Assembly: GCA_002269645.1 (NCBI GenBank) | Contig: NIVC01000733.1 | Span: 124,001 to 188,000, forward strand | DNA length: 64,000 nt | Reading direction: 5' to 3' | From: Macrostomum lignano | Lineage: Eukaryota | In this document: positions 13,591 to 38,427 of the stretch, one piece after another | How the letters are laid out: the number at the start of each line of letters is the position of its first letter | How positions within the stretch are numbered: the stretch's first letter is position 1 | Notes under the pieces: generated by a model | The model's input: the letters and a program-made list of their open reading frames with translations, nothing else | Database searches by the model: none | Told to the model about the DNA's origin: nothing | Position numbers and translations under genes: made by a program

Positions 13591-15649
13591 AACTGCTGGC
13601 GCAACAGATAGGTCATTTAGTGTATAAAAAAGATTTGTACTTACCAAAAAGTTGCAGAATGAATTAAGAATGGCCAAATGTAAAATTGTATGGTGCTTTT
13701 AAAGTTAAATTTTAAGAATTTTCTTAAGCGACAAGTATCTCAGAATAAGATTTTTAACTCAAAAACTAATTCCTATGAAACAAACAGTAAATACTCTTTT
13801 TTATTGATACTCAACACATATTATGACACAATAGTAACAAAAAGAAAATATTTTTGTTTAACTTTGAACTTATTAGCTACGAGAATACGTACAAATTTGA
13901 CTGATTAAAGAAGCAGCGATTTATCGCGTACTTATATCACGTACGTATCACAATACGCATCACGTATTCGTAGACTCACTGGTTTCACACAGAAATTTTT
14001 TTAAAAACTGAGAGAGAAACGAGTTTAATATTTAGCTTTTAGTCTAGTTTTTCTAGCTTAATAGCCTATGGTTTCTATTACAGCTGATTCAGAATAACCT
14101 TAGGCTAGACGCCAAACTACAGTCTAGTCCTAGTAAAGTAGACTAGGCCTAGTACTAGTAGTAGACCAAAATCAGTCTTTGTGTTGTTTAGAGAACATAT
14201 AGTTTATATGGTGTAATTGTGGATATGAATTCTGTGTTAATCCTTAGCATTATTTTTCTATTGATTTTTAGACTTTAGTTTAAAACCTTTCAATCTTCTA
14301 TCATAAAATTTTACTTTTATTAGTTCATTAATTAAATAGTGTTTCCTATCTATTTTCCCTACTATAGAATTTATTTCATTTTTTCAACTGTTAATATATA
14401 AGTATTGTATAGACATTTTAAGGTCATTAGCTAGCTAAGTACCAGTAGATTAGCATGTATTTATTGCTAGCTCTGCAAGTTAAACAGGGTTAAGTAACAG
14501 GGTTAGATAGCCATAGTTAGTATAAAACTCTAAAATTAGGGGTCAAACTGTCACGATGTTGATGGTGGCGTAGCGGCTAACTATGGCTAGGACCCTTAAA
14601 AGGGCCATTTTACGAGAGTCGTTGTAAGTCGTAGTTCCAAAATAAGTTGAAGTCAACTCTTGCAAAGCGGATTGTGTAGCGGAGCACTTGACAATAAAGG
14701 CAGGAAACTGCCGTAGTTGTTTTATTGTTAAAATCAATATTAGGCTTGGTTATTACTGTCAATACACAAACTATAGCTTCTGGGCACTGGCGGCTGCAAC
14801 AATGGTTTTGAATATAATTGGAGGTGAAGTCAAGTGACAGACGAGTGATGCGATGGCGACGTAACGTAATGAGCAATAGCAATGAGCACAGTGAAGGCGG
14901 TGGGACACAGTAGGCAGGATTGGCGTCAGCCGTGGCGTGAGGTAAGGAGGCTCGAGGCAGCCAGACAGAGAACAAGGCAGACAAGCCTAAGGAGAGAGAG
15001 AGAGCAAAACCAGGAAAGAAGGTGGAGACCCCCAACTCGCCAGGCGAGGGTTAATAAAGGAGCGCAGAGGGGGGTAGCACGAAGCATGAGCGGTTCTCAT
15101 TGGCTGGCTAAAGAACTTAAAATTATCGATCGTGCCAGTTTTCTACGGTCGCATGAAAGGATAGCAAAATGCGCAATGAGTTAGCGATAAGTACAAATTC
15201 ATTGGGCACTACTACAAGTAAACGTTAAAATAAACTATTGGAAAAATTAAAATGAGAAATAGCAAGGGAAACTATAGTCCAACGGCCCCTCTCGGGACCA
15301 CTTAAACTAGCAACGTCACACAAACCTTGCATACAAGGCCAGGGCATAACCATGAATTTTCTTTGGGGCCATTTGTTTTTGCTCCTAGTTTCTAAACTTA
15401 TGCTTAAAAAGTTGGGAAACACTATAAATTTTCATTTTTGTATATTATAAAATACTAAAATAAAATCTAATAAATATTGACAATAAATATTTAAGTAAGA
15501 ATTGTTTTAACTAATCTGTTTGTGCATGTCAGCCTATGCAATGCTCTGCATAAGTGCACTTTATTGTCATTATATGATTGCCTTTTTTCCTTAGTTTTTG
15601 ACTTTTCTAAGTCAAGTCTCAATTAAAATCTCAAGTCTATACATGGCAC

Positions 15650-16791: not shown

Positions 16792-17374
16792 TCAAACACA
16801 TCCACCTTCCAATTCATTGTTATTATCCATTGCGTTCTCGGCACCAACTTGGGCAAGCAGTTCCTCTCGTCTGGCACACATCCGCTGAGTAGAAACTGGA
16901 CCCTGCGTCAGAGAAACGTAGTGACGCAGTGCTTTGAAGGTGACGTCTTCGCTCAGAGCTGTTGGACCCAGCGCCAGCAACTGACGTAGCCGTTTTTGAC
17001 CAAGCGCCCGGTTAAGCAGATTAATTAGCGTTCGTTCTGGCCCGCTAGACGTTGGTTCTGCGCAACAGCATTCTTGAATCCACGCCAATGGAATAGCCAT
17101 CTGGTAGCTGGTGTCAGTTGCCAGCAGGACCTTGTCCGGCTCACTTGGATCCTGCTTGGTGTGCTCCAGCCAGTCGCAGTTCCTGCTCCCAGCATTAGAG
17201 TGTCGTTGGCTTGACCAGTCAAGTTGATCAGCTTGAATCTGGTTTAGACGTCGGTTCAACTGCTCCAAGGTTGAATGAATCGGCGATATTGTGAATGTTA
17301 GAATGGCCGATAGTTGAGCAGTGTAGCGCTGGAAAAGTTCTTCAAGCATCGACTTGGTCAACGGTTGTTCCTGT

Positions 17375-17413
<39 letters not shown>

Positions 17414-18132
17414 AAAAGCTGCTGCGTAGCCAACAATCCGTGATGCTGTTGAGTCTGCTGCGGTGCCGCTGCAGCTAAAAAGGCACCCAGCGAAACAGCA
17501 GCAGTCGGAGGCAGATGAGTTGGTGTCGAGATCGTCGGTCTGAGGGTTACACTTGCCTGTTGCTGCTGCTGCTGCTGCTGCAACTGCTGGCACTGATTTT
17601 GCTGTGCTTGCGCCCTTGGAATCAGCGGGCGGGGGAGCACCATCTGCGGTGCGCGGCGCAGCAGCGGGATTGCGATAGTTGCACCTGTTGTCGCTGCGGC
17701 AGTTGTCGTTACAGTATGAAGCGACGGCTGCAGCGAATTTTGCACAGGCTGTAGTTGAGGCTCTGAATCGTCTTTTTCCACTGCTCCGTATTCGGCTTCA
17801 GTCTCGGTTGAATCGGCTTCCTCGCCGTCCTCGCCAGGCGGCGTCACCTCGTCGTCCACGTTGCTGGCTTGATCGTCCGCTCCACCAATAGTTGTCTCAT
17901 CGCTAGCCGACGGCGTGACAAATGGACCGCCGAGATGTGCGGAAGTGGACGGATCGACGTCGATAGTGGTTGGCGTTGGCGATTTATCGGCCCGGCGGAG
18001 TCGCTTCCTATTGCCCAGGCTGTGCTTGTAGAGATCGGCAATTCGATCGCGATCTTTGATCCAAGTTGCCAGGGTGCTGGGCGGCAGGCGCATCTCTCGG
18101 ATTATGGCCGACTTGGCCTCGCCGTTCTCGAT
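16792..18132 (-). CDS. CENP-B-type HTH / polyQ protein, exon 2
   Basis: Acceptor gaacag|atc, in frame with the 433-aa ORF. IENGEAKSAIIREMRLPPSTLATWIKDRDRI...RKRLRR completes a CENP-B_N/psq-like HTH, followed by acidic, polyQ and coiled-coil segments. Confidence 0.8.
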
Positions 18133-21456: not shown

Positions 21457-21612
21457 ATGGACAGCAGTTCAGTACAGACATTAGGCGCTGGTGCAGCAGC
21501 CGTGCTGGTTGGCACTCTGTTTTATCGTTGGCTGTCATATCCCAGCAGACAGTTCGGCCCGACGCCTCTGCTAAGTGTGCTTGAGGATCGGCAACAGTCC
21601 AGGGTGCTTTCG
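21457..21612 (+). CDS. ACSL: Long-chain fatty-acid-CoA ligase (ACSL1/5-like), exon 1 with N-terminal membrane anchor
   Basis: MDSSSVQTLGAGAAAVLVGTLFYRWLS (hydrophobic anchor); donor tcg|gtaagg phase 0 matches exon 2. Confidence 0.75.
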
Positions 21613-22289
21613 GTAAGGTGTTCCGCAATTTTCTGTGTTTGTTCTTCTCAGTTACGAGTACATTTACGAGCTATAAGCGTTTTATTTTAATTATTGATTT
21701 TAGGATGCTGTCAGTGTTTTGGGCACGCAGTGACGGGCACACATTCCGTTACAATCGGAGTTAAGCAGTTTTAAAAAAAGTTTTTTTAGCCTATCTTGTT
21801 GATAAATAAGCGTTTGTGATGCTTTGGGAATCTGATCCCTTGGGGTTGGGAGTGTAATATCTTTGGAATGCAAAGTCTTGGAATGTAATGTCTTTAAGAA
21901 TGCAATATCTCGAAATGTGACGCTTTTGGAATATGGATAATGTCTACGAATATATTGTCTTAAGAATGTGATCTCTTGTGAGTGTGACTTCGTATATAGG
22001 AATGTAATGTCTAAAGCATGACAACACAAACATTGCATCATATCTGAACCTTGTGACGGTTTTACGACCTGGGTGTTTTGTGCGAGTTTGAAGTTTTTTT
22101 AAGATTGGGAATGTTTATGTAATGTTTTGGATGCGATATCTTAAAAATGTTGTGCTAATTATTGTTTGGGCAAATTTTCGTGATTATTTGGCACATAGCT
22201 TTCATGGTTTTCACAGAAGACACAATTATGTTGATGTGGTTCATGGAACGGAATTAAAAAAATTGAATTAACTACATGGAGCTTCTGTC

Positions 22290-22938
22290 TGACCTCAGCC
22301 TTGACATTTCAGCAATCCCCCCGTAAGCCTTGATATCTCAGCAATCCCCCCGTAAGCCTTGATATCTCAGCAATCCCCTCGTAGTCGTAAGCCTTGATAT
22401 CTCAGCAATCCCCTCGTAGTCGTAAGCCTTGATATCTCAGCAATCCCCTCGTAAGCCTTGATATCTCAGCAATCCCCTCGTAAGCCTTGATATCTCAGCA
22501 ATTCCCCCGTAAGCCTTGACATCTCAGCAATCCCCCCGTAAGCCTTGACATCTCAGCAATTCCCCCGTAAGCCTTGACATCTCAGCAATTCCCCCGTAAG
22601 CCTTGACATCTCAGCAATCCCCCCGTAAGCCTTGACATCTCAGCAATCCCCCCGTAAGCCTTGACATCTCAGCAATCCCCCCGTAAGCCTTGACATCTCA
22701 GCAATCCCCCGTAAGCCTTGACATCTCAGCAACCCCCCGTAAGCCTTGACATCTCAGCAATCCCCCCCGTAAGCCTTGACATCTCAGTAATCCCCCCGTA
22801 AGCCTTGACATCTCAGCAATTCCCCCGTAAGCCTTGACATCTCAGCAATTCCCCCGTAAGCCTTGACATCTCAGCAATCCCCCCGTAAGCCTTGACATCT
22901 CAGCAACCCCCCGTAAGCCTTGATATCTCAGCAACCCC
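22290..22938. repeat. ~29-bp minisatellite GTAAGCCTTGACATCTCAGCAATCCCCCC in ACSL intron 1
   Basis: About 21 copies. Confidence 0.95.
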
Positions 22939-23723
22939 GTATTCTCAGTTGCAAAATTTCGGTTAGAAGCACAGACCAAGAAGTATCTTATTTCAGACTG
23001 CCCCGCCCCGTCACAGAATGCATGCCTTGAACAAAACAGTAGCTATCTTTTGCAATGTTCGTAAAACTTAGAAGCACTCAGACAAGTTTTGCTGGGCGTG
23101 GGCATGGGCACTTCTTTCTATTTTACGAGTACTTTCCTACGTTTAGCCATCAGCGCTCGTTGTTTTCAGTGCTGGGAAATTTTTTTTCCAAGTGAATTTT
23201 TGCATCATATCTCTACAATCGTTTTACTTCTTTCTTTAGCTTCCGAAAAAAATGCGCTTCGTTTTTAAAAGCTTTTAGAAAAGTAGTCGTAGACAAGAAA
23301 AAAGAGAGAAGAGAAGCCGTATTTTCTTACTCTCAGGTCAGGACTCGGGACCAAGCTACCAGGCCGGACTCGCTTCCATTAAACAATTTAGCAGCCACTG
23401 GTTTCGAGTCTACGGCATTCGTTTAATTTTTTGGCTGTGTTGAGGCCACGGCGCAGTGGTTTGGGTGAGGTCTGAGGGTGCAGAGCTTGGGGTTGGGGTT
23501 GTGCGTGCCCTGTGGGGGGGGGTTGCGTGCGCTGCGGGGGGTGGGGCGCTGCGGGGCGCGGCAGAGTCTAAAACTAAAACCAGAGAACTAAATAGAGGCT
23601 GACGTAGACAAATAAATTCTGGTAAGGGCCAGATTTGGAAAGACTCGGGTGTACATCCACGCTTTGCTAGAGTGTACATTGGCTTTATTTATGTGGGATA
23701 GAGGGAGAGAAATGTGAATGAAC

Positions 23724-26700
23724 CACAGACCAAGAAATATAACTAGACTGCGCATGAGGGTAAAAAAAGTTGTGCCTTTTTCCTAGTAGGAAAAGTGGCA
23801 CCCCAGTGCCCACTCCCCCACGATCGATAATTGTGCCCGGGCCTTTCTTACCCTCAGCCAACTCAGCTTGTCGGGGTCTCTTTTTTCTTTATGTTCGTAA
23901 CTAGTGAAAATTCAGACTCAGTAAGAAATAGGATTAACAAATCAACAACTACAGATTCATTTTTAATTTATCTAGAATTTTTTGCACGCATTTAATGGCA
24001 AATATATAGTTTATCACGGGAATAAGCTTAAACAGAATGCATTGAAGCCATAACTTACCAGCCTCCATATGCGAATACGCTGATTACAAATTAAGAAAAA
24101 TCGCTGTTCGAAGCAGCCTTTGCCTCTTGCCGGGTTTTCTTCCAGCGCGTGAAAGATCCTTAGCCAGCTTCTTCATTCGAATATTTATAAAAAGCATAGC
24201 CATTACTCGAATCAAATGCAGCTTGTGAGACTCAATGCTGATACTCGCGGATGCCGAATGAGAGTCCAGTTCAGGGAACAGATTGATTGACATGCGCAGA
24301 ATCTCCTGAACAGCTACATCACTAGAGAATCCGCTGCTGTAGCTGGCACGCCGAACAACAGTCTCTGCATTGAGCAGCACCCGCAGGACATTGCTGCTAG
24401 GAAAAATCAGGCCGCCAGTTCCTTCCTTGTTCAAAACATTTTTTATGGCAACGAGTGAGCATGGTCCGCGTGAAGCTCCTGGCGTCTCAGAGCTTGCGAT
24501 CAGAGCTGACCTGCACGGAGCACATTCAACTGCTTTCATCATTCTTCGGACGACCGCGCCTGCGATATAGCACACGATGGACTGGCAAATTTCACACACC
24601 GATGCATTCTTGCAGTGTTGGATTGAACCCAGACTCAGTCCCATTTCATTTTGAGCTTTCATCTGCTTCCATGGCTGCTGTCCTGATGATGATGGCAGAC
24701 AAGACAATGATAACTGAATAGTGGCATCCTGCTGCCTCACATTCGGACTCACGGACTGTAGAATTCCACCTCCGGCATGCACCAACAGCTGCCTGAATGC
24801 TGAGCGAAATTGCGTGGGCGTTGGGTTATGGTTCCAGCCATTTCGTAGCCTTACTGCATTAAAAAACAGTTCGAGAAAATCCTGCGAAAGCTTGTAAGTG
24901 CAAAGAAAGAAGAATTCGCCAGTCGAAAATAAATACTTAGCGAGCTCCATAATGCCATGGCAGTTGGTGATGAAGCCTAGGAAGCCAGTCTTCTTTGCGG
25001 TTTCTACTATCTTACAGCCAGCCGGAGTTTCAAGGCTACGGAGAAGTTCGATCGAGCTAGAGAAGAAATCGATCCAATCCGACTGATTGTCAGCTCTAAG
25101 CGCCATTTTGGCGCCATAACTGACCAGCCGCTTGGAATTGAAAGCGTCGAACAAATCATTCATGTGCTCAACGAAATCTGCGGTGACTAGCACATCAGAG
25201 TGCTCAAATCCGATCACACCTTGCTGATGCACCCATCGCAAAGAGTCGGCCACTGACTTGCTAAACAGTTGTGATGCCAAATAGACCTTCATCTTTAAAT
25301 TAGCAAAGTTGATGTGATGCCTGCTTAACTTGTTTCCAAGTCGGAGTCCATGACTTTCTTGTACTTGCTGCAACATGGAAACATATTTCCATTCAATATT
25401 TCCTCTGTTCGGCCAAACAAATCTTCCCAGTGACTGCCACTGATTGCGAATCAGCTTTAACATGTGAGGCACATCCAGGAAGGCTGCAACCTGAATGCTA
25501 GGATCGCAGGGGTGCGGGAAGCAGGCGACGACCTCGTTCGGAGAACTTATCCTGGAGCCAAGGAGTTCGATCGCTCGAATGTTGTGCTGAGTTCCATCGC
25601 ATGTGAATGATGTTGCTATGACGCCAACCTGGTACAGTCGCTGAATGGATTCCTCTACAACGCTCGAAAGAAATTCGCCGTCAACTCCATTCACTAGAAA
25701 ATACCCTAAAGGCAGCTTCCAATAGCTCTTAAGCCCCACTGCCATCACTACCAGTGCCGAAGACGCCTCCTGATCACTTGGTTTGCCATCGCCTTTGTCA
25801 ACGTAGCCAAAAAACATACCTTCGCTTGAATTCCATTCAATCATCGACTCTAGCGACATTTCATCAGCAACAACGTTGCAGTAGTCAAAGGCTTGGCCGT
25901 CAGTGGAGCTGCGTCGCCGCGAAAGTTCCTGGAAAGCCTGATCGCAAAACCCTGGAAAGCACTTTGCATTTGAGAGCCATTTTCTAAGTGACGCAGGATG
26001 TGGAAGCTGAAAGTACTTTCGTACATACTCATAAGCCTTCGGACTATAGAAATGCAATGTAGAGGCGAATTTGCGCACTTCGTCAGAGAACCTCTTTGTC
26101 CTTTTTCTATTGCAAGGCACGATGCTGCTCAGCAGTGAATCGGAGGTCAAGAAATTCAATCGAGATGCCGCTGCTTCGTTTAACATGCACTTGGCCTTTA
26201 GATCCAGAATTGCGTCCTTCAATGTTTTGGCTCTATGTTTAATTTGCCTGTGCTTTGAGCGCAGAGATCGAATTTTTCTGTACTTGCTCTGTACCGTCCG
26301 ACGCAGGATTTCAATGGCCTTAGCACTTTTCTTAGATCTCTTATGAGCAGCCAAAAGCCTTTTGTATCTGCGCCTCAGGTTTTTTAGGACTCTCACCTTT
26401 TCTTCGAATAGTTCTCTGGCCACACAGTTGGCATGCAGTTCTTGTAGGGGTTGTTCTGGTTCATCTGCCTCCGTGTCAGTTGGCTGAGCCTTCGTCTTGC
26501 TACATTCCGGCGCTTTCAAAAATGCAGCAAAGTCAACTTCCTGAGCAGCGGCGGCGGCGGCGGTGGCTGTTTTTCGCTTCTTTTCAACAGGCTGCAGGCG
26601 GTCAGGGAGCGTCGGGAAGATAGAAGGAACAGCATTTGGATACAGCCGCCTTCTTGTGGTGGGCAGAAAGCCGGCTAGTTGTTCCTTGAAGCAAGACTCT

Positions 26701-27209
26701 GCAAAGTGGACCGAGCAGACTTGGGTGGTCGCCGATGGTTTGAACTCCTTGCGTCGGAGCGCAACCAGCCACTTTCTCTTCATTTCAGTGTCTTTTGGAA
26801 AAAAATGGAAGGACACTGCCGGAGACATTGACGAGTTGTTCGAGCAGCCTAGAGCGCAGCAAAAGCTGCCGTGACTTTTTCTGCTAGGCAGTTTTGAAGA
26901 ATTAGATTCTTCCATGGCAGTTCGATTTAGTGAGGATTGATTTAGATTAGACTGAAGCAGCTTGCTTTGTATTTCAAGTATGTGTTTTATAAGTTTATAT
27001 TTTTGGCCCCAGACCACTTTAATATATAGCTACATATCAACGCAGGCGGAAAGAAAAGCAGGCCTGTACCCTAACTTCTTGCCCAAGCACAATTATCGAT
27101 CGTTTTCGAGTAGGGAGAGAGGGACCATTTTTTCCACTGTCATTTGGTCAAAAACAAGCCCAAGCAAGAAATGCGGGATGCGCAGTCTAGTTATATTTCT
27201 TGGTCTGTG
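23724..27209 (-). mobile_element. Complete P-superfamily DNA transposon (3486 bp) in ACSL intron 1
   Basis: Identical 32-bp TIRs CACAGACCAAGAAATATAACTAGACTGCGCAT (23724-23755, 27178-27209). 8-bp TSD GAATGAAC (23716-23723, 27210-27217). Subterminal inverted repeat at 23820-23842 and 27081-27103. Encodes a THAP-P transposase. Confidence 0.95.
24084..26915 (-). CDS. THAP-domain P-element transposase (THAP9-like), ~943 aa, intronless
   Basis: gccATGg start. C2CH THAP domain (CCALGC...W...CSVHF...AVPSIF), coiled coil, ADEM, TCDG, DVPHMLKLIRN, MKVYLASQLFS, LSQDFLELFF, C-terminal YIAG..CxxC. No stops or frameshifts. Confidence 0.95.
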   Translation of the reverse strand: MEESNSSKLPSRKSHGSFCCALGCSNNSSMSPAVSFHFFPKDTEMKRKWLVALRRKEFKPSATTQVCSVHFAESCFKEQLAGFLPTTRRRLYPNAVPSIFPTLPDRLQPVEKKRKTATAAAAAAQEVDFAAFLKAPECSKTKAQPTDTEADEPEQPLQELHANCVARELFEEKVRVLKNLRRRYKRLLAAHKRSKKSAKAIEILRRTVQSKYRKIRSLRSKHRQIKHRAKTLKDAILDLKAKCMLNEAAASRLNFLTSDSLLSSIVPCNRKRTKRFSDEVRKFASTLHFYSPKAYEYVRKYFQLPHPASLRKWLSNAKCFPGFCDQAFQELSRRRSSTDGQAFDYCNVVADEMSLESMIEWNSSEGMFFGYVDKGDGKPSDQEASSALVVMAVGLKSYWKLPLGYFLVNGVDGEFLSSVVEESIQRLYQVGVIATSFTCDGTQHNIRAIELLGSRISSPNEVVACFPHPCDPSIQVAAFLDVPHMLKLIRNQWQSLGRFVWPNRGNIEWKYVSMLQQVQESHGLRLGNKLSRHHINFANLKMKVYLASQLFSKSVADSLRWVHQQGVIGFEHSDVLVTADFVEHMNDLFDAFNSKRLVSYGAKMALRADNQSDWIDFFSSSIELLRSLETPAGCKIVETAKKTGFLGFITNCHGIMELAKYLFSTGEFFFLCTYKLSQDFLELFFNAVRLRNGWNHNPTPTQFRSAFRQLLVHAGGGILQSVSPNVRQQDATIQLSLSCLPSSSGQQPWKQMKAQNEMGLSLGSIQHCKNASVCEICQSIVCYIAGAVVRRMMKAVECAPCRSALIASSETPGASRGPCSLVAIKNVLNKEGTGGLIFPSSNVLRVLLNAETVVRRASYSSGFSSDVAVQEILRMSINLFPELDSHSASASISIESHKLHLIRVMAMLFINIRMKKLAKDLSRAGRKPGKRQRLLRTAIFLNL

Positions 27210-28264
27210 GAATGAACAGTGTTGTAAAACGATGAATAGCAGCAGCCCTTATTCTACGAACTTGCTTAACATTTTCAACCCCCTTCTCTCTAGAGGCTCG
27301 CCCTCTATATTAATTGTTCAGAAATTTAACAACAGCTTTAATTTTTTAAAACCAAACCAACAAAAGATTCTTCCACTAAAGTCTATACTAATATACTGAT
27401 AAATGGGTAATCAAAGTTCAACAGGACAATATTCTCCCAGCGGAGATGGTAATAACAATAAGTCTGGAACAATGCGCCGATCCAAGTCTGGCACATCGGT
27501 ATTTCCACGTTACGAAACTCAATCTACTCTCTTACCTGTAAGTACTTTAGTATAATATATAATATGCCTTTAATCTAAATGTGAATGGAAGCTCTAGTTA
27601 ATAATTATTAATACTCGTAGGTCAGTCATGTATACAAAACTGAACTGAAAGAGACCATTTATTCTCGCGAGTCTTGATTCTTATCTCTGCGCTTTAGTTT
27701 GAAGTTCGAATTCGAAACGGCCGAACTAAATATGATTAGACCTTATGCGCACATATATATATATACTATAGGCATAAGTGACGTGCGTGCCTCTAATTTT
27801 AGTATGAGCTACAACTACAACTAGCTAAAGGTCAAAAGTTACGTTAAAAGTCTTGAAATATTGCCAAGTCACGACTGAGGGACCAGCAGATTAGTCATTA
27901 AAAAATCCAAATGAACAAAACACGCATTCTGGTTCTGGCACTGGCACTAGCCATCTATCGTAAATATCTACTGTTATGCTAAAAATAGACCTTATAGCTT
28001 AACTAACTTTTATTTATAACAAATGCAAATTTTCTAACGCGAAACCAGAACTCGTACTAATTTAAGCAACAGCCTAAGAGTGACTTAGCAATAGCGCCAT
28101 CATGTGACTTTTCTAATGCATTCCAGCACACTACAGCAGGTTTTTATTGTAGCACGATGTTTTTATTTATAACAGCTTGGGTTTTGGGCAAAATGGGTTT
28201 TGAAAAGCATGATATACAAATTTGTTGATGTCATGATATTCTGCAAGGAGTGAGACTCTGAGGT

Positions 28265-28668
28265 GTAAGATTCTAGAGCCTCTTAGGGGTGAGATTCTAG
28301 AGCCTCTTAGGGGTGAGATTCTAGAGCCTCTTAGGGATGAGATTCTAGCGCCTCTTAGGGGTGAGATTCTAGGGCCACTTGTCTTAGCGGTGAGATTCTA
28401 GAGCCGCTTGTCTTAGTGGTGAGATTCTAGAGCCGCTTGTCTCTGAGGGATGAGATTCTAGTGCCGCTTGTCTTTCTGAGGGGTGAGATTCTAGTGCCGC
28501 TTGTCTCTTTTAGGGGTGAGATTCTAGAGCCGCTCGTCTCTCTGAGAGTCTGAGGGGTGAGATTCTAGTGCCGCTTGTCTCTTTTAGGGGTGAGATTCTA
28601 GAGCCGCTTGTCTCTTTTAGGGGTGAGATTCTAGAGCCGCTCGTCTCTCTGAGGGGTGAGATTCTAGG
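28265..28668. repeat. Minisatellite with variable unit length, core AGGGGTGAGATTCTAGAGCC
   Basis: About 13 copies whose unit length increases along the array. Confidence 0.9.
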
Positions 28669-28778
28669 CGCGCATTTTTCTAGGCTGGTGAGAATCTATA
28701 GATTCTTTTTTTCATGCCCAAACTATAAAATCCGCTTTTTACTACTCACAAGCTACTCACACTCACCCACCTGTTCAG

Positions 28779-29415
28779 GACGGCTCTCGATGCTGGCCAT
28801 TCTCGGACTCGACCGAGATTATCGAGTACTGCTACGAAGAGGCCAAAACTTTGCACGACGGGTTCCTTCGCGGCATCCGCCAGTCGAACAATGGACCCTG
28901 CTTGGGTACTCGGGTTGGCGAAGGCCCATACGAGTGGCTGACCTACCAGCAGGTGTATGATCAGGCCAGGGAGCTGGGCAGCGCGCTAACAGGTCGCCTG
29001 GGCTTGTCTCGCGGCGAATTCGTTGGCGTCTATTCGCAAAACCGAGCTGAATGGGTGCTGACTGAAGTGGCTTGCAATCAGTTCTCACTGGTGCTGGTGC
29101 CGCTATATGACACCCTGGGCACTGAGGCGTGCAGTCACATCCTCAGCCAGACCAGCTCGAGTGTTGTTGTTGTCGACTCAGAAACCAAGGCTAGGAATCT
29201 GTTGCAGTGCAAAGCTGAGGCGCCGTCGTTTCGACATGTGGTGCTAATGGGGATTGATTCCCCTAAACCGGAGCTGGTCAAAGAGGCTCAGGAGGCTGGG
29301 GTGGAGCTGCACGCTTGGTCTGAGCTTGTGAGCTGGGGTAGAGAGAATCTCGCCGAGGTGAACCCGCCTGCGCCTGACGATTTGGCTACTCTGTGCTACA
29401 CTAGCGGCACTACTG
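28779..29415 (+). CDS. ACSL: ACSL exon 2
   Basis: gttcag|gac acceptor, g|gtgag donor (phase 1). GPYEWLTYQQV...YSQNRAEW...VPLYDTLG...DDLATLCYTSGTT (AMP-binding P-loop). Confidence 0.95.
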
Positions 29416-29499
29416 GTGAGCTTGTCTACCGATATGTATCGCTTAATTCATGTGTTCGTGTATTAATCATGCGTTTACTAACTGTTTATCACTCAAATT

Positions 29500-30082
29500 T
29501 GAAACTCTCACAAACTCGAAAGTTCACTCAAACTCGAAGCTTCACTCAAACTTGAAGCTTTAATCAAACTCGAAGCTTCACTCAAACTCGAAGCTTCATT
29601 CAAACTCAAACTCGGAGCTTCACTCAAACTCGAAGCTTCACTCAAACTCAAACTCTGAGCTTCACTCAAACTGGAAGCTTTACTCAAACTGGAAGCTTTA
29701 CTCAAACTCTAAGCTTTACTCAAACTCGAAGCTTCACTCAAACTCGAAGCTTTACTCAAACTCGAAGCTTCATTCAAACTCAAACTCGGAGCTTCACTCA
29801 AACTCGAAGCTTCACTCAAACTCAAACTCTGAGCTTCACTCAAACTGGAAGCTTTACTCAAACTGGAAGCTTTACTCAAACTCTAAGCTTTACTCAAACT
29901 CGAAGCTTCACTCAAACTCGAAGCTTTACTCAAACTCGAAGCTTCACTCAAACTCGAAGCTTTACTCAAACTCGAAAGTTCACTCAAACTCGAAGCTTCA
30001 CTCAAACTCGAAGCTTTCACAAACTCGAAGCTTCATTCAAACTCGGAGCTTCACTCAAACTCGAAGCTCTCAAACTCGAATG
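29500..30082. repeat. 18-bp minisatellite ACTCAAACTCGAAGCTTC in ACSL intron 2
   Basis: About 30 copies. Confidence 0.93.
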
Positions 30083-30191: not shown

Positions 30192-30292
30192 GTGTACCCA
30201 AGGGTGTGCAGCTCACGCACAAGAATATAATGAGCAACATGGCTGGCGTGTACAGTGTGCTGTTGTTAGACCAGAAGAGCAACGCTAATCAG
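30192..30292 (+). CDS. ACSL: ACSL exon 3 (not in ORF track)
   Basis: cccag|gt gta ccc aag ggt: completes TSGTTG-VPKGVQLTHKNIMSN; donor cag|gtgagg. Confidence 0.92.
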
Positions 30293-30434
30293 GTGAGGCC
30301 TGCTTGCTTTTTACCTGTGATGAGTTTTAGCCATCAAAACTAATATGGATAATTTGTGAACATATAGTAGTTTTAGTGTCTGTAGCAGTGATATTTTAAT
30401 ATATTTGTATCGTGTTCTCACTACTTGGGTTGGG

Positions 30435-30820
30435 ATACTGATGGAGTCTTATCTCTAGGGGTGAGATTCTAATCGAGTCTTATCTCTAGAGGTGAGATAC
30501 TAATGAAGTCTTATCTCTAGGGGTGAGATTCTAATGGAGTCTTATCTCTAGGGGTGAGATTCTAATCGAGTCTTATCTCTAGGGGTGAGATACTGATGGA
30601 GTCTTATCTCTAGGGGTGAGATACTGATGGAGTCTTATCTCTAGGGGTGAGATACTGATGGAGTCTAATCTCTAGGGGTGAGATTCTAATGGAGTCTTAT
30701 CTCTAGGGGTGAGATACTGATGGAGTCTAATCTCTAGGGGTGAGATTCTAATGGAGTCTTATCTCTAGGGGTGAGATTCTAATCTAGTCTTCCTCTATAC
30801 GGAGGAGATTCTAATCTAGT
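30435..30820. repeat. 31-bp minisatellite TCTCTAGGGGTGAGATTCTAATGGAGTCTTA in ACSL intron 3
   Basis: About 12 copies. Confidence 0.92.
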
Positions 30821-30972
30821 CTAGTTTATCCAAGAGTGAGAGTCTACAGTGGTCATTTGCGATAAGATTTCATATTTAAATTTCATAACACGCCTACTTA
30901 TTACGGCTTCATCTACTACAAGATAATTATCGTATTAAAATAGTTGCAACCCCTCACTACTAACTGCAGCAG

Positions 30973-31360
30973 GTCCTGCCGCCTATGACGCCGGAAGACA
31001 CCTACCTGTCCTACCTGCCCCTGGCGCACATGTTCGAGCGTTGCGCAATCACCATGTGCTTCCTGAACGGCATGCGTGTCGGATTCTTCCGCGGCGATGT
31101 TCGCCAGCTGATGGAGGACATGCAGGCTCTGCGGCCAACCCTGTTCTGCACCGTGCCGCGGCTGCTCAACCGCATGTACGACCGGGTGCTCGCTGGCGTC
31201 TCCGGCAGCGTCATCAAGTCCAAGCTGCTGCAGATGGCTGTTGATAGGAAGACTCGAATGCTCGAACGTGGAATCATACGACGGGACACGATGTGGGATA
31301 AATTGGTGTTCTCTAAGGTGCACCAGCTGACTGGAGGCCGGGTCCGAGTGGTGATTACAG
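30973..31360 (+). CDS. ACSL: ACSL exon 4
   Basis: CAGCAG tandem acceptor; YLSYLPLAHMFER...PTLFCTVPRLLNR...GGRVRVVIT; donor g|gtgaga (phase 1). Confidence 0.95.
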
Positions 31361-31384
31361 GTGAGAGCGGAATTGGTGCTTGAT

Positions 31385-31640: not shown

Positions 31641-31712
31641 CGATACTAATGTTATCTTGTCCAATATCAATATTAACTAATCCTATCGTTAATCCCAATA
31701 ATCCCCGTTCAG

Positions 31713-32194
31713 GCTCGGCCCCCATCGGCGCCAAGGTGATGCAGTTCATCCGCGCCGCTTTCGGCTGCCCAGTATTCGAAGGCTACGGCCAGACTGAGGC
31801 CACTGCCGCCGTCACGGTCACCCTGCCCGGCGAGACCAGCCTGGGCCACGTGGGCACCCCGGTTCCCTGCAACCACGTCAAGCTGGTCGACGTGCCCGAG
31901 ATGGGCCTGAAAGCCAGCGACGGTCGTGGCGAAGTTTGCGTCCGCGGAGCCAACGTGTCCAGCGGCTACTTCCGGATGGACGACAAAACTGCCGAGGTGC
32001 TGGAGCCGGACAACTGGCTGCACACGGGCGACATTGGCGAGTGGACGGAGAACGGCTGCTTGAAAATTGTGGACCGTAGGAAGCATTTGTTTAAACTGGC
32101 TCAGGGCGAATACGTGGCACCTGAGAAGATTGAGCAACTCCTAAGCCGGTCTCAGTATGTGGCGCAGATCTTTGTTGATGGCGACTCACTTGAG
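31713..32194 (+). CDS. ACSL: ACSL exon 5
   Basis: ttcag|gc tcg; GSAP...EGYGQTE...GEVCVRG...WLHTGDIG...IVDRRKHLFKLAQGEYVAPEKIE; donor gag|gtgatt. Confidence 0.95.
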
Positions 32195-32234
32195 GTGATT
32201 AGATTCAACTTGAAAAGTTTATAACGATCTAAAC

Positions 32235-33095
32235 TACAAGTTTTGCTCCTACATTATTAGTACACACGTACTTTAAAATCGTAAAGTACAAGTATACTCC
32301 TACATAATTAGTACACACGAACTTTAGAATCGTAAAGTACAAGTGTAGTCCTACATAATTAGTACACACGTACTTTAGAATTGTATAATACAAGGGTACT
32401 CGTACATTATTAGTACACATGAACTTAAACTCTTAAAGTACAAGTGTACTCGTACATTGTTAGTACACACGAACTTTAGAATTGTATAATACAAGGGTAC
32501 TCGTACATTATTAGCACACATGAACTTAAACTCTTAAAGTACAAGTATACTCCTACATAATTAGTACACACGAACTTTAGAATCGTAAAGTACAAGTGTA
32601 GTCCTACATAATTAGTACACACGTACTTTAAAATCGTAAAGTACAAGTGTACTCCTACATTATTAGTACACACGAACTTTAGAATCTTGAAGTACAAGTG
32701 TACTCCTACATAATTAGTACACACGAACTTTAGAATTGTATAATACAAGGGTACTCGTACATTATTAGTACACATGAACTTAAACTCTTAAAGTACAAGT
32801 GTACTCGTACATTGTTAGTACACACGAACTTTAGAATTGTATAATACAAGGGTACTCGTACATTATTAGCACACATGAACTTAAACTCTTAAAGTACAAG
32901 TGTACTCGTACATTATTAGTACACACGAACTTTAGAATTGTATAATACAAGTGTACTCGTATATTATTAGTACACATGAACTTAAACTCTTAAAGTACAA
33001 GTGTACTCGTACATTATTAGCACACACGAACTTCAAAATCGTAAAGTAAAAGTTTTCTCGTACGTTATAAGTACACGCGAACTTTAAAATCGTGC
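32235..33095. repeat. ~50-51-bp minisatellite in ACSL intron 5
   Basis: About 17 copies; 17-codon periodicity seen in the spurious ORFs. Confidence 0.92.
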
Positions 33096-33184
33096 TACTC
33101 GTAGGTTATTAGGATATGCGCACTAATAGTGCAAGTGCACTTTATGAAAAGCGTCAAGTACAAGCGCACTAATGCATATTGCAG

Positions 33185-33523
33185 ATCTACGTCTTGGGCA
33201 TAGTGGTCCCTGACCCGGACGTGGTCCTGCCCTGGGCTAAGTCACACGGCTTGCCTCAGGACCTCGAGGCCCTGTGCAAGGACCCTAACGGGCCGCTGAA
33301 ACGAGCGATCCTGGAAGACCTGAACCGGATCGGCCGCGAGAACGGGCTTAAAGGCTTCGAACTGTGCAAGGACATCATGCTGTGCGCTGAGCAGTTCTCA
33401 GTTGAGAACGGCCTGCTAACGCCGACGTTCAAATCGCGGCGGCCGGATCTGCGCGTGAGATTTCGCGACGACTTCAAGCGAATGTACGATGGACTCAGGG
33501 CCTCCAGCAGTGCGGCAGCTTAA
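33185..33523 (+). CDS. ACSL: ACSL exon 6 (last)
   Basis: ttgcag|atc; ...FSVENGLLTPTFKSRR...TAA. Six exons total 2103 nt = 700 aa. Confidence 0.95.
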   Translation: MYVLGIVVPDPDVVLPWAKSHGLPQDLEALCKDPNGPLKRAILEDLNRIGRENGLKGFELCKDIMLCAEQFSVENGLLTPTFKSRRPDLRVRFRDDFKRMYDGLRASSSAAA

Positions 33524-34486: not shown

Positions 34487-37400
34487 GTCACTGATCCCAG
34501 TTTCATTTGCAATGTCACTCTCCATCATTTTCACTCGTCATGTCACTGATCCCAGTTTCATTTGCAATGTCACTCTCCATCATTTTCACTCGCCTTGTCA
34601 CTTATCCCCGTTTCATTTGCAATGTCACTCTCCATCATTTTCACTCGTCATGTCACTGATCCCAGTTTCATTTGCAATGTCACTCTCCATCATTTTCACT
34701 CGCCTTGTCACTGATCCCCGTTTCATTTGCAATGTCACTCTCCATCATTTTCACTCGCCATGTCACTGATCCCAGTTTCATTTGCAATGTCACTCTCCAT
34801 CATTTTCACTCGTCATGTCACTGATCCCAGTTTCATTTGCAATGTCACTCTCCATCATTTTCACTCGCCTTGTCACTTATCCCCGTTTCATTTGCAATGT
34901 CACTCTCCATCATTTTCACTCGTCATGTCACTGATCCCCGTTTCATTTGCAATGTCACTCTCCATCATTTTCACTCGCCTTGTCACTTATCCCCGTTTCA
35001 TTTGCAATGTCACTCTCCATCATTTTCACTCGCCATGTCACTGATCCCAGTTTCATTTGCAATGTCACTCTCCATCATTTTCACTCGCCATGTCACTGAT
35101 CCCCGTTTCATTTGCAATGTCACTCTCCATCATTTTCACTCGCCTTGTCACTTATCCCCGTTTCATTTGCAATGTCACTCTCCATCATTTTCACTCGCCA
35201 TGTCACTGATCCCAGTTTCATTTGCAATGTCACTCTCCATCATTTTCACTGGCCATGTCACTGATCGCAGTTTCACTTGCAATGTCACTCTCCATCATTT
35301 TCACTCGCCATGTCACTGATCCCAGTTTTATTTGCAATGTCACTCTCCATCATTTTCACTCGTCATGTCACTGATCCCAGTTTCATTTGCAGTGTCACTC
35401 TCCATCATTTTCACTCGTCATGTCACTGGGGAGTACGACGTTTGCTTGCGGGAAGTTTGCTTGCCGAACTTTGCTTGCCGAACTTTGCTTGCGGAATTTT
35501 GCCTGCCGAACTTTGCTTGCCGAACTTTGCTTGCGGAATTTTGCCTGCCGAACTTTGCTTGCCGAACTTTGCTTGCGGAATTTTGCTTGCTGAAGTTTGC
35601 TTGCCGAACTTTGCTTGCCGAACTTTGCTTGCAGGAAATTTGCTTGCAGGAACTTTGCCTGCCGAAGTTTGCTTGCCGAGCTTTGCTTGCAGGAATTTTG
35701 CTTGCCGAGCTTTGCTTGCAGGAATTTTGCTTGCCGAACTTTGCTTGCGAAATTTTGATGTCTGCTTTCTAGAAAATTGCAATCACACAATCGCAAGGTT
35801 TTAACTTGCAGAATTATTTTCTTGTTTGCTTGCTTGTTTTGATTGCTTGTAAAGTTGGTCAGTCAATTATTACTTACTACAGATGCTTTGCAAGTGGATT
35901 CTTATCAGGGTCGACGTAAACTGACTCTTGACTTTCAAAGCTTTCAAACTAGGCTTATAGAGTTTCATTCTAAGAATGTAGTATATAGAGTGCTTAGAGA
36001 TTTAGTATAGGTAGATAGGGATCGGTAACAGTATAAATCTTTGTAGTTCCTGATTTCAGCACGATTGAGCAGGTATGATAATTGCAGTGATGCTAATGTA
36101 TAATATTGCATATACGAGCGTACTAATAATATTTTAGTATATAAAATGTAGTTAATAATCCGCCATATCCTCATACAAAATCATAACACTATAGGCGACT
36201 TCCACGAATCTTAGAAAATGAAAATTAGAAATACAAGAGCTCAAAAATAGGTTTCTTTAAGGTTCCGCAATAATTTGGCTGGCAAACCTCGCAAGCAAAT
36301 TTCCTGCAAGCAAAGTTCGGCAAGCAAACTTCCTGCAAGCAAACTTCGGCAAGCTTATGTGCAGCAAGCAAATTTCCTGCAAGCAAAATTCGGCAAGCAA
36401 AATTCCGCAAGCAAAGTTCGGCAAGCAGACTTCGGCAAGCAAACTTCGGCAAGCTTATGTGCAGCAAGCAAATTTCCTGCAAGCAAAATTCGGCAGGCAA
36501 AATTCCGCAAGCAAAGTTCGGCAAGCAGACTTCGGCAAGCAAAATTCCGCAAGCAAAGTTCGGCAAGCAGACTTCGGCAAGCAAAATTCCGCAAGCAAAG
36601 TTCGGCAAGCAGACTTCGGCAAGCAAAATTCCGCAAGAAAATTCGGCAAGCAGACTTCGGCAAGCAAACTTCTCGCAAGCAAATTTCATAGACCCTGTCA
36701 CTGATCCCAGTTTCATTTGCAATGTCACTCTCCATCATTTTCACTCGCCTTGTCACTTATCCCCGTTTCATTTGCAATGTCACTCTCCATCATTTTCACT
36801 CGTCATGTCACTGATCCCAGTTTCATTTGCAATGTCACTCTCCATCATTTTCACTCGCCATGTCACTGATCCCCGTTTCATTTGCAATGTCACTCTCCAT
36901 CATTTTCACTCGCCTTGTCACTTATCCCCGTTTCATTTGCAATGTCACTCTCCATCATTTTCACTCGTCATGTCACTGATCCCCGTTTCATTTGCAATGT
37001 CACTCTCCATCATTTTCACTGGCCATGTCACTGATCCCCGTTTCATTTGCAATGTCACTCTCCATCATTTTCACTCGCCATGTCACTGATCCCAGTTTCA
37101 TTTGCAATGTCACTCTCCATCATTTTCACTCGTCATGTCACTGATCCCCGTTTCACTTGCAATGTCACTCTCCATCATTTTCACTCGCCATGTCACTGAT
37201 CCCCGTTTCATTTGCAATGTCACTCTCCATCATTTTCACTCGTCATGTCACTGATCCCCGTTTCATTTGCAATGTCACTCCATCATTTTCACTCGTCTTG
37301 TCACTGATCCCAGTTTCATTTGCAATGTCACTCTCCATCATTTTCATTCGTCTTGTCACTGATCCCAGTTTCATTTGCAATGTCACTCTCCATCATTTTC

Positions 37401-37552
37401 ATTCGTCTTGTCACTGATCCCAGTTTCATTTGCAATGTCACTCTCCATCATTTTCACTCGTCATGTCACTGGTCCCCGTTTCATTTGCAATGTCACTCTC
37501 CATCATTTTCACTCGTCATGTCACTGGTCCCAGTTTCACTTGCAATGTCACT
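34487..37552. repeat. 55-bp satellite GTCACTGATCCCAGTTTCATTTGCAATGTCACTCTCCATCATTTTCACTCGCCAT, interrupted by an insertion at 35429-36695
   Basis: Arrays at 34487-35428 and 36696-37552 resume in register across the insertion. Confidence 0.95.
35429..36695. mobile_element. Non-autonomous foldback element with GG..CC ends and tandem-repeat arms (Merlin-like)
   Basis: 8-bp TSD TGTCACTG (35421-35428, 36696-36703). Imperfect TIR GGG...TTTGCTTGCG.GAAGTTTGCTTGCCGAA. Arms are oppositely oriented arrays of TTTGCTTGCCGAAC-like units around an AT-rich non-coding core. Confidence 0.85.
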
Positions 37553-38427
37553 CATTTTTGTTCAGAGTTAGAAAGCAAAGTCAAGGTTGAGTTCATCATT
37601 TCCGTCTCTTTCTCACTCTCGCTCTGCTTGCTCAGTGTTGAAGCTAACGAGTACCCCTAGCTACCATCAGCCATGCATGGTGATGAGGTGTGGAGCATGG
37701 AGTCGCATCTCTCAGCAGGGTGCTGCAAGCGCTCCCAAACACACACACTAATGGAACAGGCGCACAACAATGGATCACGCTGTGAGCAGAGTAACGCGAG
37801 AAGGCAGGCGCACCTGCTCCGCCAGGGAATTAACGGGGTTCCAAAGCCTTCATCCTCTGCGCAGCTTCCTCTCTGCCTATAGCTTAACTTCAGTTTTGGT
37901 TGGCTGATTCAGCTATAGCAGCCATAATCACAGAATATATATAGTCATTTCATCTTAAGTGTATCCAAGGCGTGGTGGGCATCAAAGAAATTCTTGGCCT
38001 AAGCCCGTTCAGCTCTGCACTCGCCATGGCAGGAAGTTAAGACGGAGAGAGGTAGATAGGCCCTATAACTCCTTAAGTCCTGCATGTATACCTGACCTTA
38101 GCGATTCTACTAAGAAGACTGAGAGAAGAGAGAAAGATTGAGATTGAGTGTGCACACTCAGACTCAGAGAAGCTTCCACACTGCACGCCACGATCGCTTG
38201 TGTGTATGTGTGTGTTTACCGAAAGACCGTTCCTTCAGAGCTCACACAGCATATATATGTAAGAGGGTATTACAACAAGACCTCCAATACAGCCAACCAA
38301 TAAGCGTGCTTAGAGAAATCGACGGAGACCAAAAGTTAGCTATATATATGTACTGAGTTCCTCGGAAAGGCGACCTATTATATACTGAATCAGACTTCCG
38401 TTCCACCTAGACAGAGGCGGACGGACA

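What the first reader, a model, noticed from the sequence alone, without database searches (positions are those of the whole stretch)
23716..27217. Complete, apparently intact P-superfamily transposon with THAP transposase in an ACSL intron
Seen in sequence: identical 32-bp TIRs with CA..TG ends, an identical 8-bp TSD (GAATGAAC), and one uninterrupted ~943-aa ORF. The ORF has a THAP C2CH domain, a coiled coil, the three acidic catalytic positions (ADEM, TCDG, QDFLE), the DxxH motif, the GTP-binding insertion region and the C-terminal YIAG/CxxC motif. Established: 8-bp TSD, ~31-bp TIRs and a THAP-RNase H transposase define the Drosophila P element/THAP9 family. The Drosophila transposase gene is spliced, whereas this one is intronless. 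Inference: undecayed TIRs, TSD and ORF point to a recent insertion and a possibly active element, which could be a transgenesis tool in this lineage. It is antisense to the host gene.
Basis: partly seen in the sequence, partly recalled or inferred. Interest (0 to 1): 0.8.

Follow-up and report, generated by a model that had tools for sequence, protein, structure and literature searches.

The report
Intact P/THAP9-type transposon in flatworm gene
This is a complete, undamaged copy of a P-element-type "jumping gene", probably in the flatworm Macrostomum, sitting backwards inside the first intron of a fatty-acid-activating (ACSL) gene; it is a well-preserved new member of a well-known transposon family, and nothing tested here shows that it still moves.

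Summary
The element is 3,486 bp (23724-27209). It has perfect 32-bp TIRs (CACAGACC...), an identical 8-bp TSD (GAATGAAC) and one uninterrupted 943-aa ORF on the minus strand.

- **Protein:** all six Pfam domains of P-element/THAP9 transposases are present. The catalytic triad is D351/D440/E682. All eight residues that contact GTP in the Drosophila enzyme are conserved. The AlphaFold model superposes on the Drosophila P transposase structure (6p5a, TM 0.84).
- **DNA ends:** a 17-bp perfect subterminal inverted repeat lies about 100 bp inside each end, with spacers of 64 and 74 bp, recalling P-element architecture.
- **Host site:** the element lies antisense in coding intron 1 (21613-28778) of an ACSL gene, whose exons I mapped.
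- **Other copies:** a Macrostomum lignano UniRef gene model carries 153/154 identical residues of this transposase, fused to a different P-like protein that is absent from the window. So at least one further, possibly partial, copy exists elsewhere.
- **Relatives:** the closest full-length relatives are 42-46% identical, also intronless, and have TIRs starting CACAGA.

Genome copy number, insertion polymorphism, expression and activity could not be tested. Verdict: a real, structurally intact, young-looking autonomous P-superfamily transposon. It is a new member of a known kind and of moderate interest.

The parts
23716..23723 (.). Left copy of the 8-bp target-site duplication, GAATGAAC
   Evidence: Read directly; identical to 27210-27217.
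23724..23755 (+). Terminal inverted repeat at the 3' end of the transposase gene, 32 bp: CACAGACCAAGAAATATAACTAGACTGCGCAT
   Evidence: 32/32 complementary to 27178-27209; 0 matches in shuffles.
23820..23836 (+). Subterminal inverted repeat (17 bp, ACGATCGATAATTGTGC), 64 bp inside the TIR. Candidate transposase (THAP) binding region (inferred).
   Evidence: 17/17 with 27087-27103. It lies within a 58-nt, 72% imperfect inverted repeat (I1).
24084..26915 (-). Transposase ORF, 943 aa plus stop, no introns. THAP aa 19-100 (nt 26861-26616). Long helix/zipper aa 159-226 (26441-26238). HTH aa 239-313 (26201-25977). RNase H N-part aa 320-453 (25958-25557; D351, D440). GTP-binding insertion domain aa 484-603 (25466-25107). 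RNase H C-part aa 674-708 (24896-24792; E682). THAP9-type C-terminal domain aa 777-920 (24587-24156).
26916..27177 (-). 5' untranslated/promoter region of the element between the TIR and the ATG. TATA-like TATATATTAAA near 27028 (consensus match only).
23756..24083 (-). 3' untranslated region with two ATTAAA poly(A)-signal variants (minus strand, at 23996 and 23967)
   Evidence: pattern matches only.
27087..27103 (-). Subterminal inverted repeat, partner of 23820-23836, 74 bp inside the TIR
27178..27209 (-). Terminal inverted repeat at the 5' end of the transposase gene, 32 bp
27210..27217 (.). Right copy of the 8-bp target-site duplication, GAATGAAC
21457..21612 (+). Host ACSL coding exon 1 (predicted): Met plus hydrophobic N-terminal anchor, donor GTAAGG at 21613
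   Evidence: in-frame junction with exon 2; N-terminal length matches homologues. Inferred, no RNA evidence.
28779..29415 (+). Host ACSL coding exon 2 (AMP-binding domain, ends ...TSGTTG; donor GTGAGC). Further exons at about 30192-30280, 30964-31380, 31700-32221 and 33173-33520.
   Evidence: (PF00501, 1.1e-35).

Best explanation
This is a full-length, autonomous-type DNA transposon of the P superfamily. It belongs to the THAP9/Pdre-like branch rather than to the Drosophila P element itself. It inserted by cut-and-paste into coding intron 1 of an ACSL gene, antisense to the host gene.

Likely mechanism, inferred from the Drosophila and zebrafish enzymes:
1. The N-terminal THAP zinc finger binds sites in the subterminal regions. 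The 17-bp subterminal inverted repeats are the best candidates.
2. The long helix (aa 159-226) oligomerises the protein and pairs the two ends, whose TIR-to-subterminal-repeat spacers differ (64 vs 74 bp).
3. The HTH domain grips the inner TIR.
4. GTP bound in the insertion domain (K529, K543, V544, S552, F589, D590, N593, D679) positions the terminal nucleotide.
5. The D351/D440/E682 site cleaves the ends and joins them to target DNA 8 bp apart. Repair then produces the GAATGAAC duplication.

Shown here: the DNA anatomy, the domain set, the conserved residues, the fold and the insertion site. Inferred: GTP use, the binding sites, and that this copy is young and still transposition-competent. 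I put the last point at about 0.5.
For: - Perfect 32-bp TIRs and an identical 8-bp TSD.
- A single 943-aa ORF that is full length at both termini compared with its closest relatives.
- Six P-transposase Pfam domains in the canonical order. Five are far above their cut-offs (THAP 65 bits, HTH 87, RNaseH_N 131, GBD 117, RNaseH_C 57); THAP9_C scores 25.3 bits against a cut-off of 24.
- PDB sequence hit to Drosophila P transposase 6p5a, E 7.6e-41.
- D351/D440/E682 align with DmTNP D230/D303/E531 and are invariant in a 33-sequence family alignment, as are D481, H484 and D679.
- All eight DmTNP GTP-contact residues listed in PMC7776569 are conserved.
- The AlphaFold model has mean pLDDT 75.7, with the catalytic core above 90. 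Its best PDB match is 6p5a_A: E 2.9e-23, TM 0.84 normalised to the target.
- Architecture is P-like: a 17-bp perfect subterminal inverted repeat about 100 bp from each end.
- Relatives at 29-46% identity have TIRs that also start CA[CT]AGA.
- A second locus exists. P0004 (UniRef A0A1I8H379, M. lignano) is 153/154 identical to residues 9-162, and its other 746 residues are not encoded in the window.
- Zero differences across the TIRs and TSD, plus an intact ORF, bound neutral decay to about 2.4-3.8% or less (inference).
Against: - No direct evidence of mobility. Genome copy number, internally deleted derivatives, empty-site alleles, transcripts and small RNAs could not be examined.
- No identical or near-identical full-length protein exists in the 5.8-billion-protein collection, so multi-copy status rests on one chimeric gene model.
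- The age bounds from 40 bp of TIR/TSD and from ORF intactness are loose.
- A missense change that kills activity would be invisible here.
- The species assignment rests on P0004 alone. The ACSL exon and another ORF in the window found no M. lignano protein.
Confidence: 0.85

Rival explanations
1. Intact-looking but dead or silenced copy. It is a genuine P-superfamily insertion, but it no longer transposes. The cause could be an inactivating missense change, loss of required subterminal binding sites, or complete host (piRNA-type) silencing.
For: Nothing tested here demonstrates activity. Only one other, possibly partial, copy is documented. No exact or near-identical full-length protein exists elsewhere in the searched collections. 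For comparison, zebrafish THAP9 excises but gave no detected integration in the reported assays (PMC10983969), so intact-looking P-like transposases can be partly defective.
Against: Every catalytic, GTP-contact and zinc-binding residue checked is conserved. The TIRs, TSD and ORF carry no lesion. The second copy is identical over the 153 residues compared, which points to recent amplification.
Confidence: 0.35
2. Domesticated THAP9-like host gene. A transposase-derived gene kept by the host for a cellular function, like human THAP9.
For: Long intact ORF with full domain conservation.
Against: It still has perfect TIRs and an 8-bp TSD. It lies antisense inside an intron of an unrelated gene. 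Part of it recurs at another locus. Domesticated THAP9 genes lack TIRs and TSDs (PMC7776569).
Confidence: 0.02
3. Chance resemblance, assembly artefact or contaminant sequence.
For: None found.
Against: The 32-bp inverted repeat and the 8-bp flanking repeat are far beyond chance. The element is embedded seamlessly between host intron sequences that are unique in the window. The host exons on either side join in frame.
Confidence: 0.01

Closest known systems
Zebrafish Pdre2 / zfTHAP9 (P-superfamily element with TIRs, 8-bp TSD and an active transposase)
   Same: Same domain order including the THAP9-type C-terminal domain. The catalytic residues sit at almost the same positions (D347/D434/E679 in zfTHAP9, against D351/D440/E682 here). 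Both have an 8-bp TSD and subterminal inverted repeats, and the GTP-contact residues are conserved in both.
   Different: TIRs are 32 bp here against 13 bp in Pdre2. The subterminal repeats are 17 bp at about 100 bp here, against 12 bp at about 400 bp. Protein identity to a cyprinid-fish (Cirrhinus) homologue is about 38% over 47% of the query. The host phylum differs.
Drosophila melanogaster P element and its transposase (DmTNP; PDB 6p5a)
   Same: 8-bp TSD. TIRs of 31-32 bp beginning CA. Subterminal inverted repeats about 100 bp in, with unequal spacing at the two ends. THAP-zipper-HTH-split RNase H-GBD organisation, the same DDE and GTP-contact residues, and fold match TM 0.84.
   Different: The Drosophila gene has four exons with a regulated third intron; this one is a single ORF. 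About 25% identity in the structural alignment. The C-terminal domain here is THAP9-type (PF22824). No TIR sequence similarity was established.
Unnamed intronless P-like elements P0001/L001 (Logan DRR639055), P0002/L002 (ENA metagenome) and P0069/P0070
   Same: Closest relatives, 42-46% identity over the full length, 904-933 aa, single ORFs. The termini start CACAGAAC (L001, L002) against CACAGACC here. L002 has 36-bp perfect TIRs ending ...GCGC.
   Different: Less than 50% protein identity, so a different family. Host organisms unknown. No clean TSD in L002, probably because it is a collapsed repeat in a short-read assembly.
Human THAP9 (domesticated P-transposase homologue)
   Same: Same protein architecture and the THAP9_C domain.
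   Different: Human THAP9 has no TIRs or TSD (PMC7776569). This element has both.

Membership tests
P superfamily of DNA transposons (P element / THAP9 / Pdre) | N-terminal THAP C2CH zinc-finger DNA-binding domain | tested here: met
   PF05485, 8.9e-18, aa 19-100. C-x(3-4)-C...C-x2-H and AVPSIF are present. PDB THAP1/THAP2 hits around 1e-12.
P superfamily of DNA transposons (P element / THAP9 / Pdre) | P-transposase HTH domain followed by an RNase H-like catalytic domain with a D, D, E triad | tested here: met
   PF12017, PF21787 and PF21789. D351/D440/E682 align with DmTNP D230/D303/E531 and are invariant in alignment A1.
P superfamily of DNA transposons (P element / THAP9 / Pdre) | GTP-binding insertion domain splitting the RNase H fold, with the GTP-contact residues | tested here: met
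   PF21788, 1.2e-33. K529, K543, V544, S552, F589, D590, N593 and D679 correspond to DmTNP K385, K400, V401, S409, F443, D444, N447 and D528. Actual GTP binding was not tested.
P superfamily of DNA transposons (P element / THAP9 / Pdre) | 8-bp target-site duplication | tested here: met
   GAATGAAC on both sides.
P superfamily of DNA transposons (P element / THAP9 / Pdre) | Terminal inverted repeats plus subterminal inverted repeats | tested here: met
   32-bp perfect TIRs. 17-bp perfect subterminal inverted repeat with 64/74-bp spacers.
P superfamily of DNA transposons (P element / THAP9 / Pdre) | Three-dimensional fold of P transposase | tested here: met
   AlphaFold model against 6p5a_A: E 2.9e-23, TM (target-normalised) 0.84. 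The next hits are RAG1 and Hermes at TM 0.3 or less.
P superfamily of DNA transposons (P element / THAP9 / Pdre) | Mobility: several copies, polymorphic insertions, internally deleted derivatives | tested here: inconclusive
   One further locus is inferred from P0004. A 13-bp TIR-end relic lies at 22970. The host genome is not available in these tools.
P superfamily of DNA transposons (P element / THAP9 / Pdre) | GTP-dependent cut-and-paste with 17-nt staggered end cleavage | not testable with these tools
   Biochemical property; needs excision and strand-transfer assays.
Canonical Drosophila P element (sensu stricto) | Four-exon transposase gene with germline-regulated third intron | tested here: not met
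   One uninterrupted ORF encodes all domains. The element works like a P element but is not the Drosophila family.
Domesticated THAP9 genes | Single-copy host gene without TIRs or TSD | tested here: not met
   TIRs and TSD are present.
Long-chain acyl-CoA synthetase (host gene) | AMP-binding domain with the TSGTTGxPKGV motif and an N-terminal hydrophobic anchor | tested here: met
   PF00501, 1.1e-35. Best hits include one that its source names long-chain acyl-CoA synthetase. The spliced junction reads TSGTTG|VPKGV. Exon 1 has a hydrophobic stretch.

The most novel reading that the evidence does not exclude
This copy is a currently active, autonomous P-superfamily transposon in Macrostomum (Platyhelminthes), from a clade of intronless THAP9-like elements with conserved CACAGA termini. 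It would then be a natural, GTP-dependent cut-and-paste system. It could be studied, or re-engineered with a heterologous transposase source, for insertional mutagenesis in a regenerating flatworm. It would also give a second tractable animal model of P-element/host (piRNA) dynamics outside Drosophila.
Probability: 0.4. Interest if true: 0.55.

Novelty: new member of a known kind. Interest (0 to 1): 0.4.

Why it matters
P-type transposons are best known from Drosophila, where they drove hybrid dysgenesis and became the main transgenesis vector. Elsewhere, most homologues are either domesticated (THAP9) or decayed.

A copy with perfect ends, an intact target duplication and a transposase that keeps every known catalytic and GTP-contact residue is a good candidate for a living element in a flatworm used for stem-cell and regeneration research. 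If active, three things follow.
- It is a source of insertional polymorphism; here it sits inside a lipid-metabolism gene.
- It is a comparative system for the unusual GTP-dependent mechanism.
- It is a possible genetic tool, although piggyBac and random-integration transgenesis already exist for M. lignano, and endogenous copies would complicate its use as a vector.

If it is not active, this is a routine transposon annotation.

Tried and rejected
- Exact-sequence look-up of the transposase in 153 billion gene positions: nothing.
- Look-up of P0004's contig, to obtain DNA of the second copy: not on record.
- Scan of JGI metagenome contigs with the protein alone: no relative. With the family alignment, 481 distant relatives at 28-38% identity. 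These served for TIR comparison, but none showed a convincing TSD. The only identical 8-mers were palindromes that belong to the TIRs. I attribute this to collapsed or chimeric repeat assembly, so TSD length could not be confirmed in relatives.
- Species confirmation using other window genes: the ACSL exon found only homologues at 45% identity or less, with no M. lignano entry. A coiled-coil ORF (43508-44137) found nothing. Rfam and tRNA scans were empty. The Macrostomum assignment therefore rests on P0004 and, circumstantially, on the heavy tandem-repeat load that matches the published genome description (PMC5730564).
- A paralogous empty site within the window: none.
- The TIR-like 13-mer at 22970 as an excision footprint or MITE: no partner end and no flanking duplication. 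Left as a relic.
- Rejected: a 33-bp TIR with a 7-bp TSD (the flanks would then differ), and the upstream GTG as start codon (relatives begin a few residues before the THAP domain).
- Ghanim et al. 2019 (PMC6948148) is not held. The GTP-contact residues were taken from the 2020 review instead.
Full report
**1. The observation**

Reading 23600-27350 shows GAATGAAC at 23716-23723 and again at 27210-27217. Immediately inside these lie CACAGACCAAGAAATATAACTAGACTGCGCAT (23724-23755) and its exact reverse complement (27178-27209). The repeat finder gives 100% complementarity (I2). A pattern search allowing three mismatches finds only these two copies of the 32-mer, with none in 100 shuffles.

The repeat finder's 33-nt arms arise because the last TSD base pairs with the first base of the other TSD. 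Only the reading 32-bp TIR + 8-bp TSD leaves identical flanks. The relatives' ends also begin CACAGA (see section 6). The element is therefore 3,486 bp.

The minus strand carries one ORF from the ATG at 26915 to the stop at 24084-24086, 943 aa. The listed 977-aa version merely extends to an upstream GTG. The window holds no other sequence similar to the element, at DNA or protein level.

**2. What the protein is**

Pfam finds all six P-transposase domains in canonical order:

| Domain | Residues | E-value |
|---|---|---|
| THAP | 19-100 | 8.9e-18 |
| P-element HTH | 239-313 | 9.6e-25 |
| RNase H N-part | 320-453 | 6.4e-38 |
| GTP-binding insertion domain | 484-603 | 1.2e-33 |
| RNase H C-part | 674-708 | 1.5e-15 |
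| THAP9-type C-terminal domain | 777-920 | 25.3 bits, just above cut-off |

- **Solved structures.** The best match by sequence is the Drosophila P transposase (6p5a, E 7.6e-41), followed by THAP1/THAP2/THAP11 for the N-terminus.
- **Catalytic triad.** From that alignment, D351, D440 and E682 correspond to DmTNP D230, D303 and E531. The 2020 review names these as the catalytic residues (PMC7776569). I confirmed the residues by position. They are invariant in an alignment of the query with 32 homologues, as are D481, H484, K487, R490, N491 and D679.
- **GTP contacts.** The review lists the residues that mediate GTP binding in DmTNP as D528, K385, K400, V401, S409, F443, D444 and N447. All eight are conserved here, as D679, K529, K543, V544, S552, F589, D590 and N593.
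- **THAP signature.** The zinc ligands and the AVPSIF motif are present.
- **Predicted structure.** An AlphaFold model built on the alignment has mean pLDDT 75.7, with values above 90 through most of residues 330-680. It shows a single 68-residue helix at 159-226 where DmTNP has its leucine zipper. Foldseek against the PDB puts 6p5a_A first (E 2.9e-23, TM 0.84 normalised to the target). RAG1, Hermes and Transib follow far behind.
- **Completeness.** The C-terminus (...RQRLLRTAIFLNL) matches those of the two closest relatives to the last residues, so the ORF is not truncated.

**3. DNA anatomy beyond the TIRs**

A perfect 17-bp inverted repeat, ACGATCGATAATTGTGC, lies at 23820-23836 and 27087-27103. 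It sits inside a 58-nt, 72% imperfect inverted repeat (I1). Overall, the terminal ~120 bp of the two ends are about 67% alike.

The spacers between TIR and subterminal repeat are 64 bp at the 3' end and 74 bp at the 5' end. The Drosophila P element likewise has 31-bp TIRs, subterminal inverted repeats about 100 bp in, and unequal spacing of internal binding sites at its two ends (PMC7776569).

A TATA-like sequence lies about 110 nt upstream of the ATG, and two ATTAAA signals follow the stop codon. These are pattern matches only.

**4. Host context**

An ORF at 28851-29555 (+) carries an AMP-binding domain. Its homologues include one that its source names long-chain acyl-CoA synthetase.

tblastn with those homologues, plus ORF inspection, maps exons on the + strand at about 28779-29415, 30192-30280, 30964-31380, 31700-32221 and 33173-33520. 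The exon 2/3 junction reconstitutes TSGTTG|VPKGV with GT-AG sites.

Exon 2 has no start codon. Upstream, at 21457-21612, an ATG-initiated segment encodes a hydrophobic N-terminus. It ends at the best donor in the region (GTAAGG) and joins in frame to the TTCAG acceptor at 28778/28779. The resulting distance from the Met to the conserved TL(H/Y)DGF motif (74 residues) matches homologues such as P0048.

The element therefore lies in coding intron 1 (21613-28778), antisense to the host gene. It accounts for about half of that intron. The exon 1 assignment is an inference without RNA support.

**5. Which organism, and other copies**

The word-indexed search of 5.8 billion proteins found one near-identical hit, P0004, which is UniRef A0A1I8H379 of Macrostomum lignano. 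Its residues 747-900 match residues 9-162 of this transposase at 153/154. The single mismatch is at the edge of the matching segment.

The first 746 residues of P0004 are a different, distantly related P-like transposase (19-37% identity to ours) that the window does not encode. So a second locus in M. lignano carries at least the 5' part of this element, next to another P-like element.

This is the only evidence for the species and for multiple copies.
- The ACSL exon and another window ORF found no M. lignano proteins.
- The exact protein is not on record.
- The window's dense tandem repeats (64 TRF rows) agree with the published description of that genome, in which simple and tandem repeats make up 15% (PMC5730564). 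This is circumstantial.

**6. Relatives**

An exhaustive HMMER search of 1.84 billion representatives finds 14,659 homologues at E<=1e-3 and 1,145 at E<=1e-30. The best full-length ones are only 42-46% identical. The superfamily is huge, and this lineage is a distinct family within it.

- The two closest relatives with DNA in hand are single ORFs of 933 and 904 aa.
- L002 has 36-bp perfect TIRs beginning CACAGAAC.
- Contig L001 begins exactly at CACAGAAC.
- Among 80 more distant loci from metagenome contigs, several have 30-60-bp TIRs starting CA[CT]AGA. These often carry (AC)TAGA.TGCG about 18 nt in, as in the window's ...ACTAGACTGCGC.
- TSDs could not be recovered in those assemblies.

**7. 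Age and activity (inference)**

There are no differences across 40 compared TIR+TSD positions. That bounds per-lineage neutral divergence to about 3.8% or less at 95%. In this ORF, 4.45% of possible substitutions create stop codons, so its intactness bounds divergence to about 2.4% or less. The identity with P0004 points the same way.

All of this fits a young insertion of a competent element, but it does not prove activity. The zebrafish homologue shows that an intact P-like transposase can excise without detectable integration in the reported assays (PMC10983969).

**8. Comparison and verdict**

In mechanism and architecture this is a P-superfamily element. Every family-defining feature testable in silico is met.

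It is not the Drosophila P family: it has no introns, only about 25% identity, and a THAP9-type C-terminal domain. It is not a domesticated THAP9, because it has TIRs and a TSD. It resembles zebrafish Pdre2/zfTHAP9 most closely in protein layout (catalytic residues at 347/434/679 there, 351/440/682 here). In TIR length and subterminal-repeat placement it is closer to the Drosophila element.

No paper in the held library mentions P elements in Macrostomum as a genome component. Transgenesis in this animal already works by random integration and by piggyBac.

I rate it a new member of a known kind. Confidence in its identity is high. I put the probability that it is currently active at about 0.4-0.5. 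Interest is moderate.

Noticed in passing
window 22970-22982 (+), context 22962-23010: A third exact copy of the terminal 13 bp of the TIR (CACAGACCAAGAA), 741 bp upstream of the element in the same intron. After small indels it is followed by AGACTGC, which also occurs in the TIR. The preceding bases GAAG resemble the GAAC that precedes the true left TIR. No partner end and no duplication were found. It is probably a relic end of a related element.
   Followed up: partly
window 45374-45949; also 15121-15134: A 40-bp satellite (14.5 copies) whose unit contains GATCGATAATT, the core of the element's 17-bp subterminal repeat. The unit aligns 33/42 with the element's 5' subterminal segment (about 27088-27127). 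The 11-mer occurs 16 times in the window against 0.03 expected. This suggests a transposon-derived satellite or a shared subterminal repeat module.
   Followed up: partly
L001, L002, L008, L030, L031, L039 (ends of the elements): P-like elements whose transposases are only 29-46% identical to this one share TIR features: a CA[CT]AGA terminus and, in most, a (AC)TAGA.TGCG motif 15-20 nt inside. This hints at conserved end recognition across this THAP9-like clade.
   Followed up: partly
P0004 (UniRef A0A1I8H379, Macrostomum lignano): A chimeric gene model. Residues 1-746 are a second, distantly related THAP/P-like transposase. Residues 747-900 are the N-terminus of the element studied here. So at least two P-superfamily lineages exist in that genome, and they lie adjacent or nested at that locus.
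   Followed up: partly
whole window, e.g. 1-787, 1957-4277, 22297-22938, 32230-33093, 34487-37553, 46314-47203, 49261-49918, 50953-51541: An unusually dense load of micro- and minisatellite arrays, many inside ACSL introns (28252-28667, 29489-30080, 30427-30822, 32230-33093). They create spurious long ORFs, for example 7307-8602 and 4774-5844.
   Followed up: no
window 16792-18093 (-): A 433-aa ATG-initiated ORF with polyQ tracts and no Pfam match. Its N-terminus faintly recalls the end of a transposase-type HTH. Function unknown.
   Followed up: no
window 43433-44824 (+): A 464-codon open frame in a 60% GC region encoding a coiled-coil-like N-terminal half. No homologue was found in the protein collection, and only weak Pfam coiled-coil noise.
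   Followed up: partly
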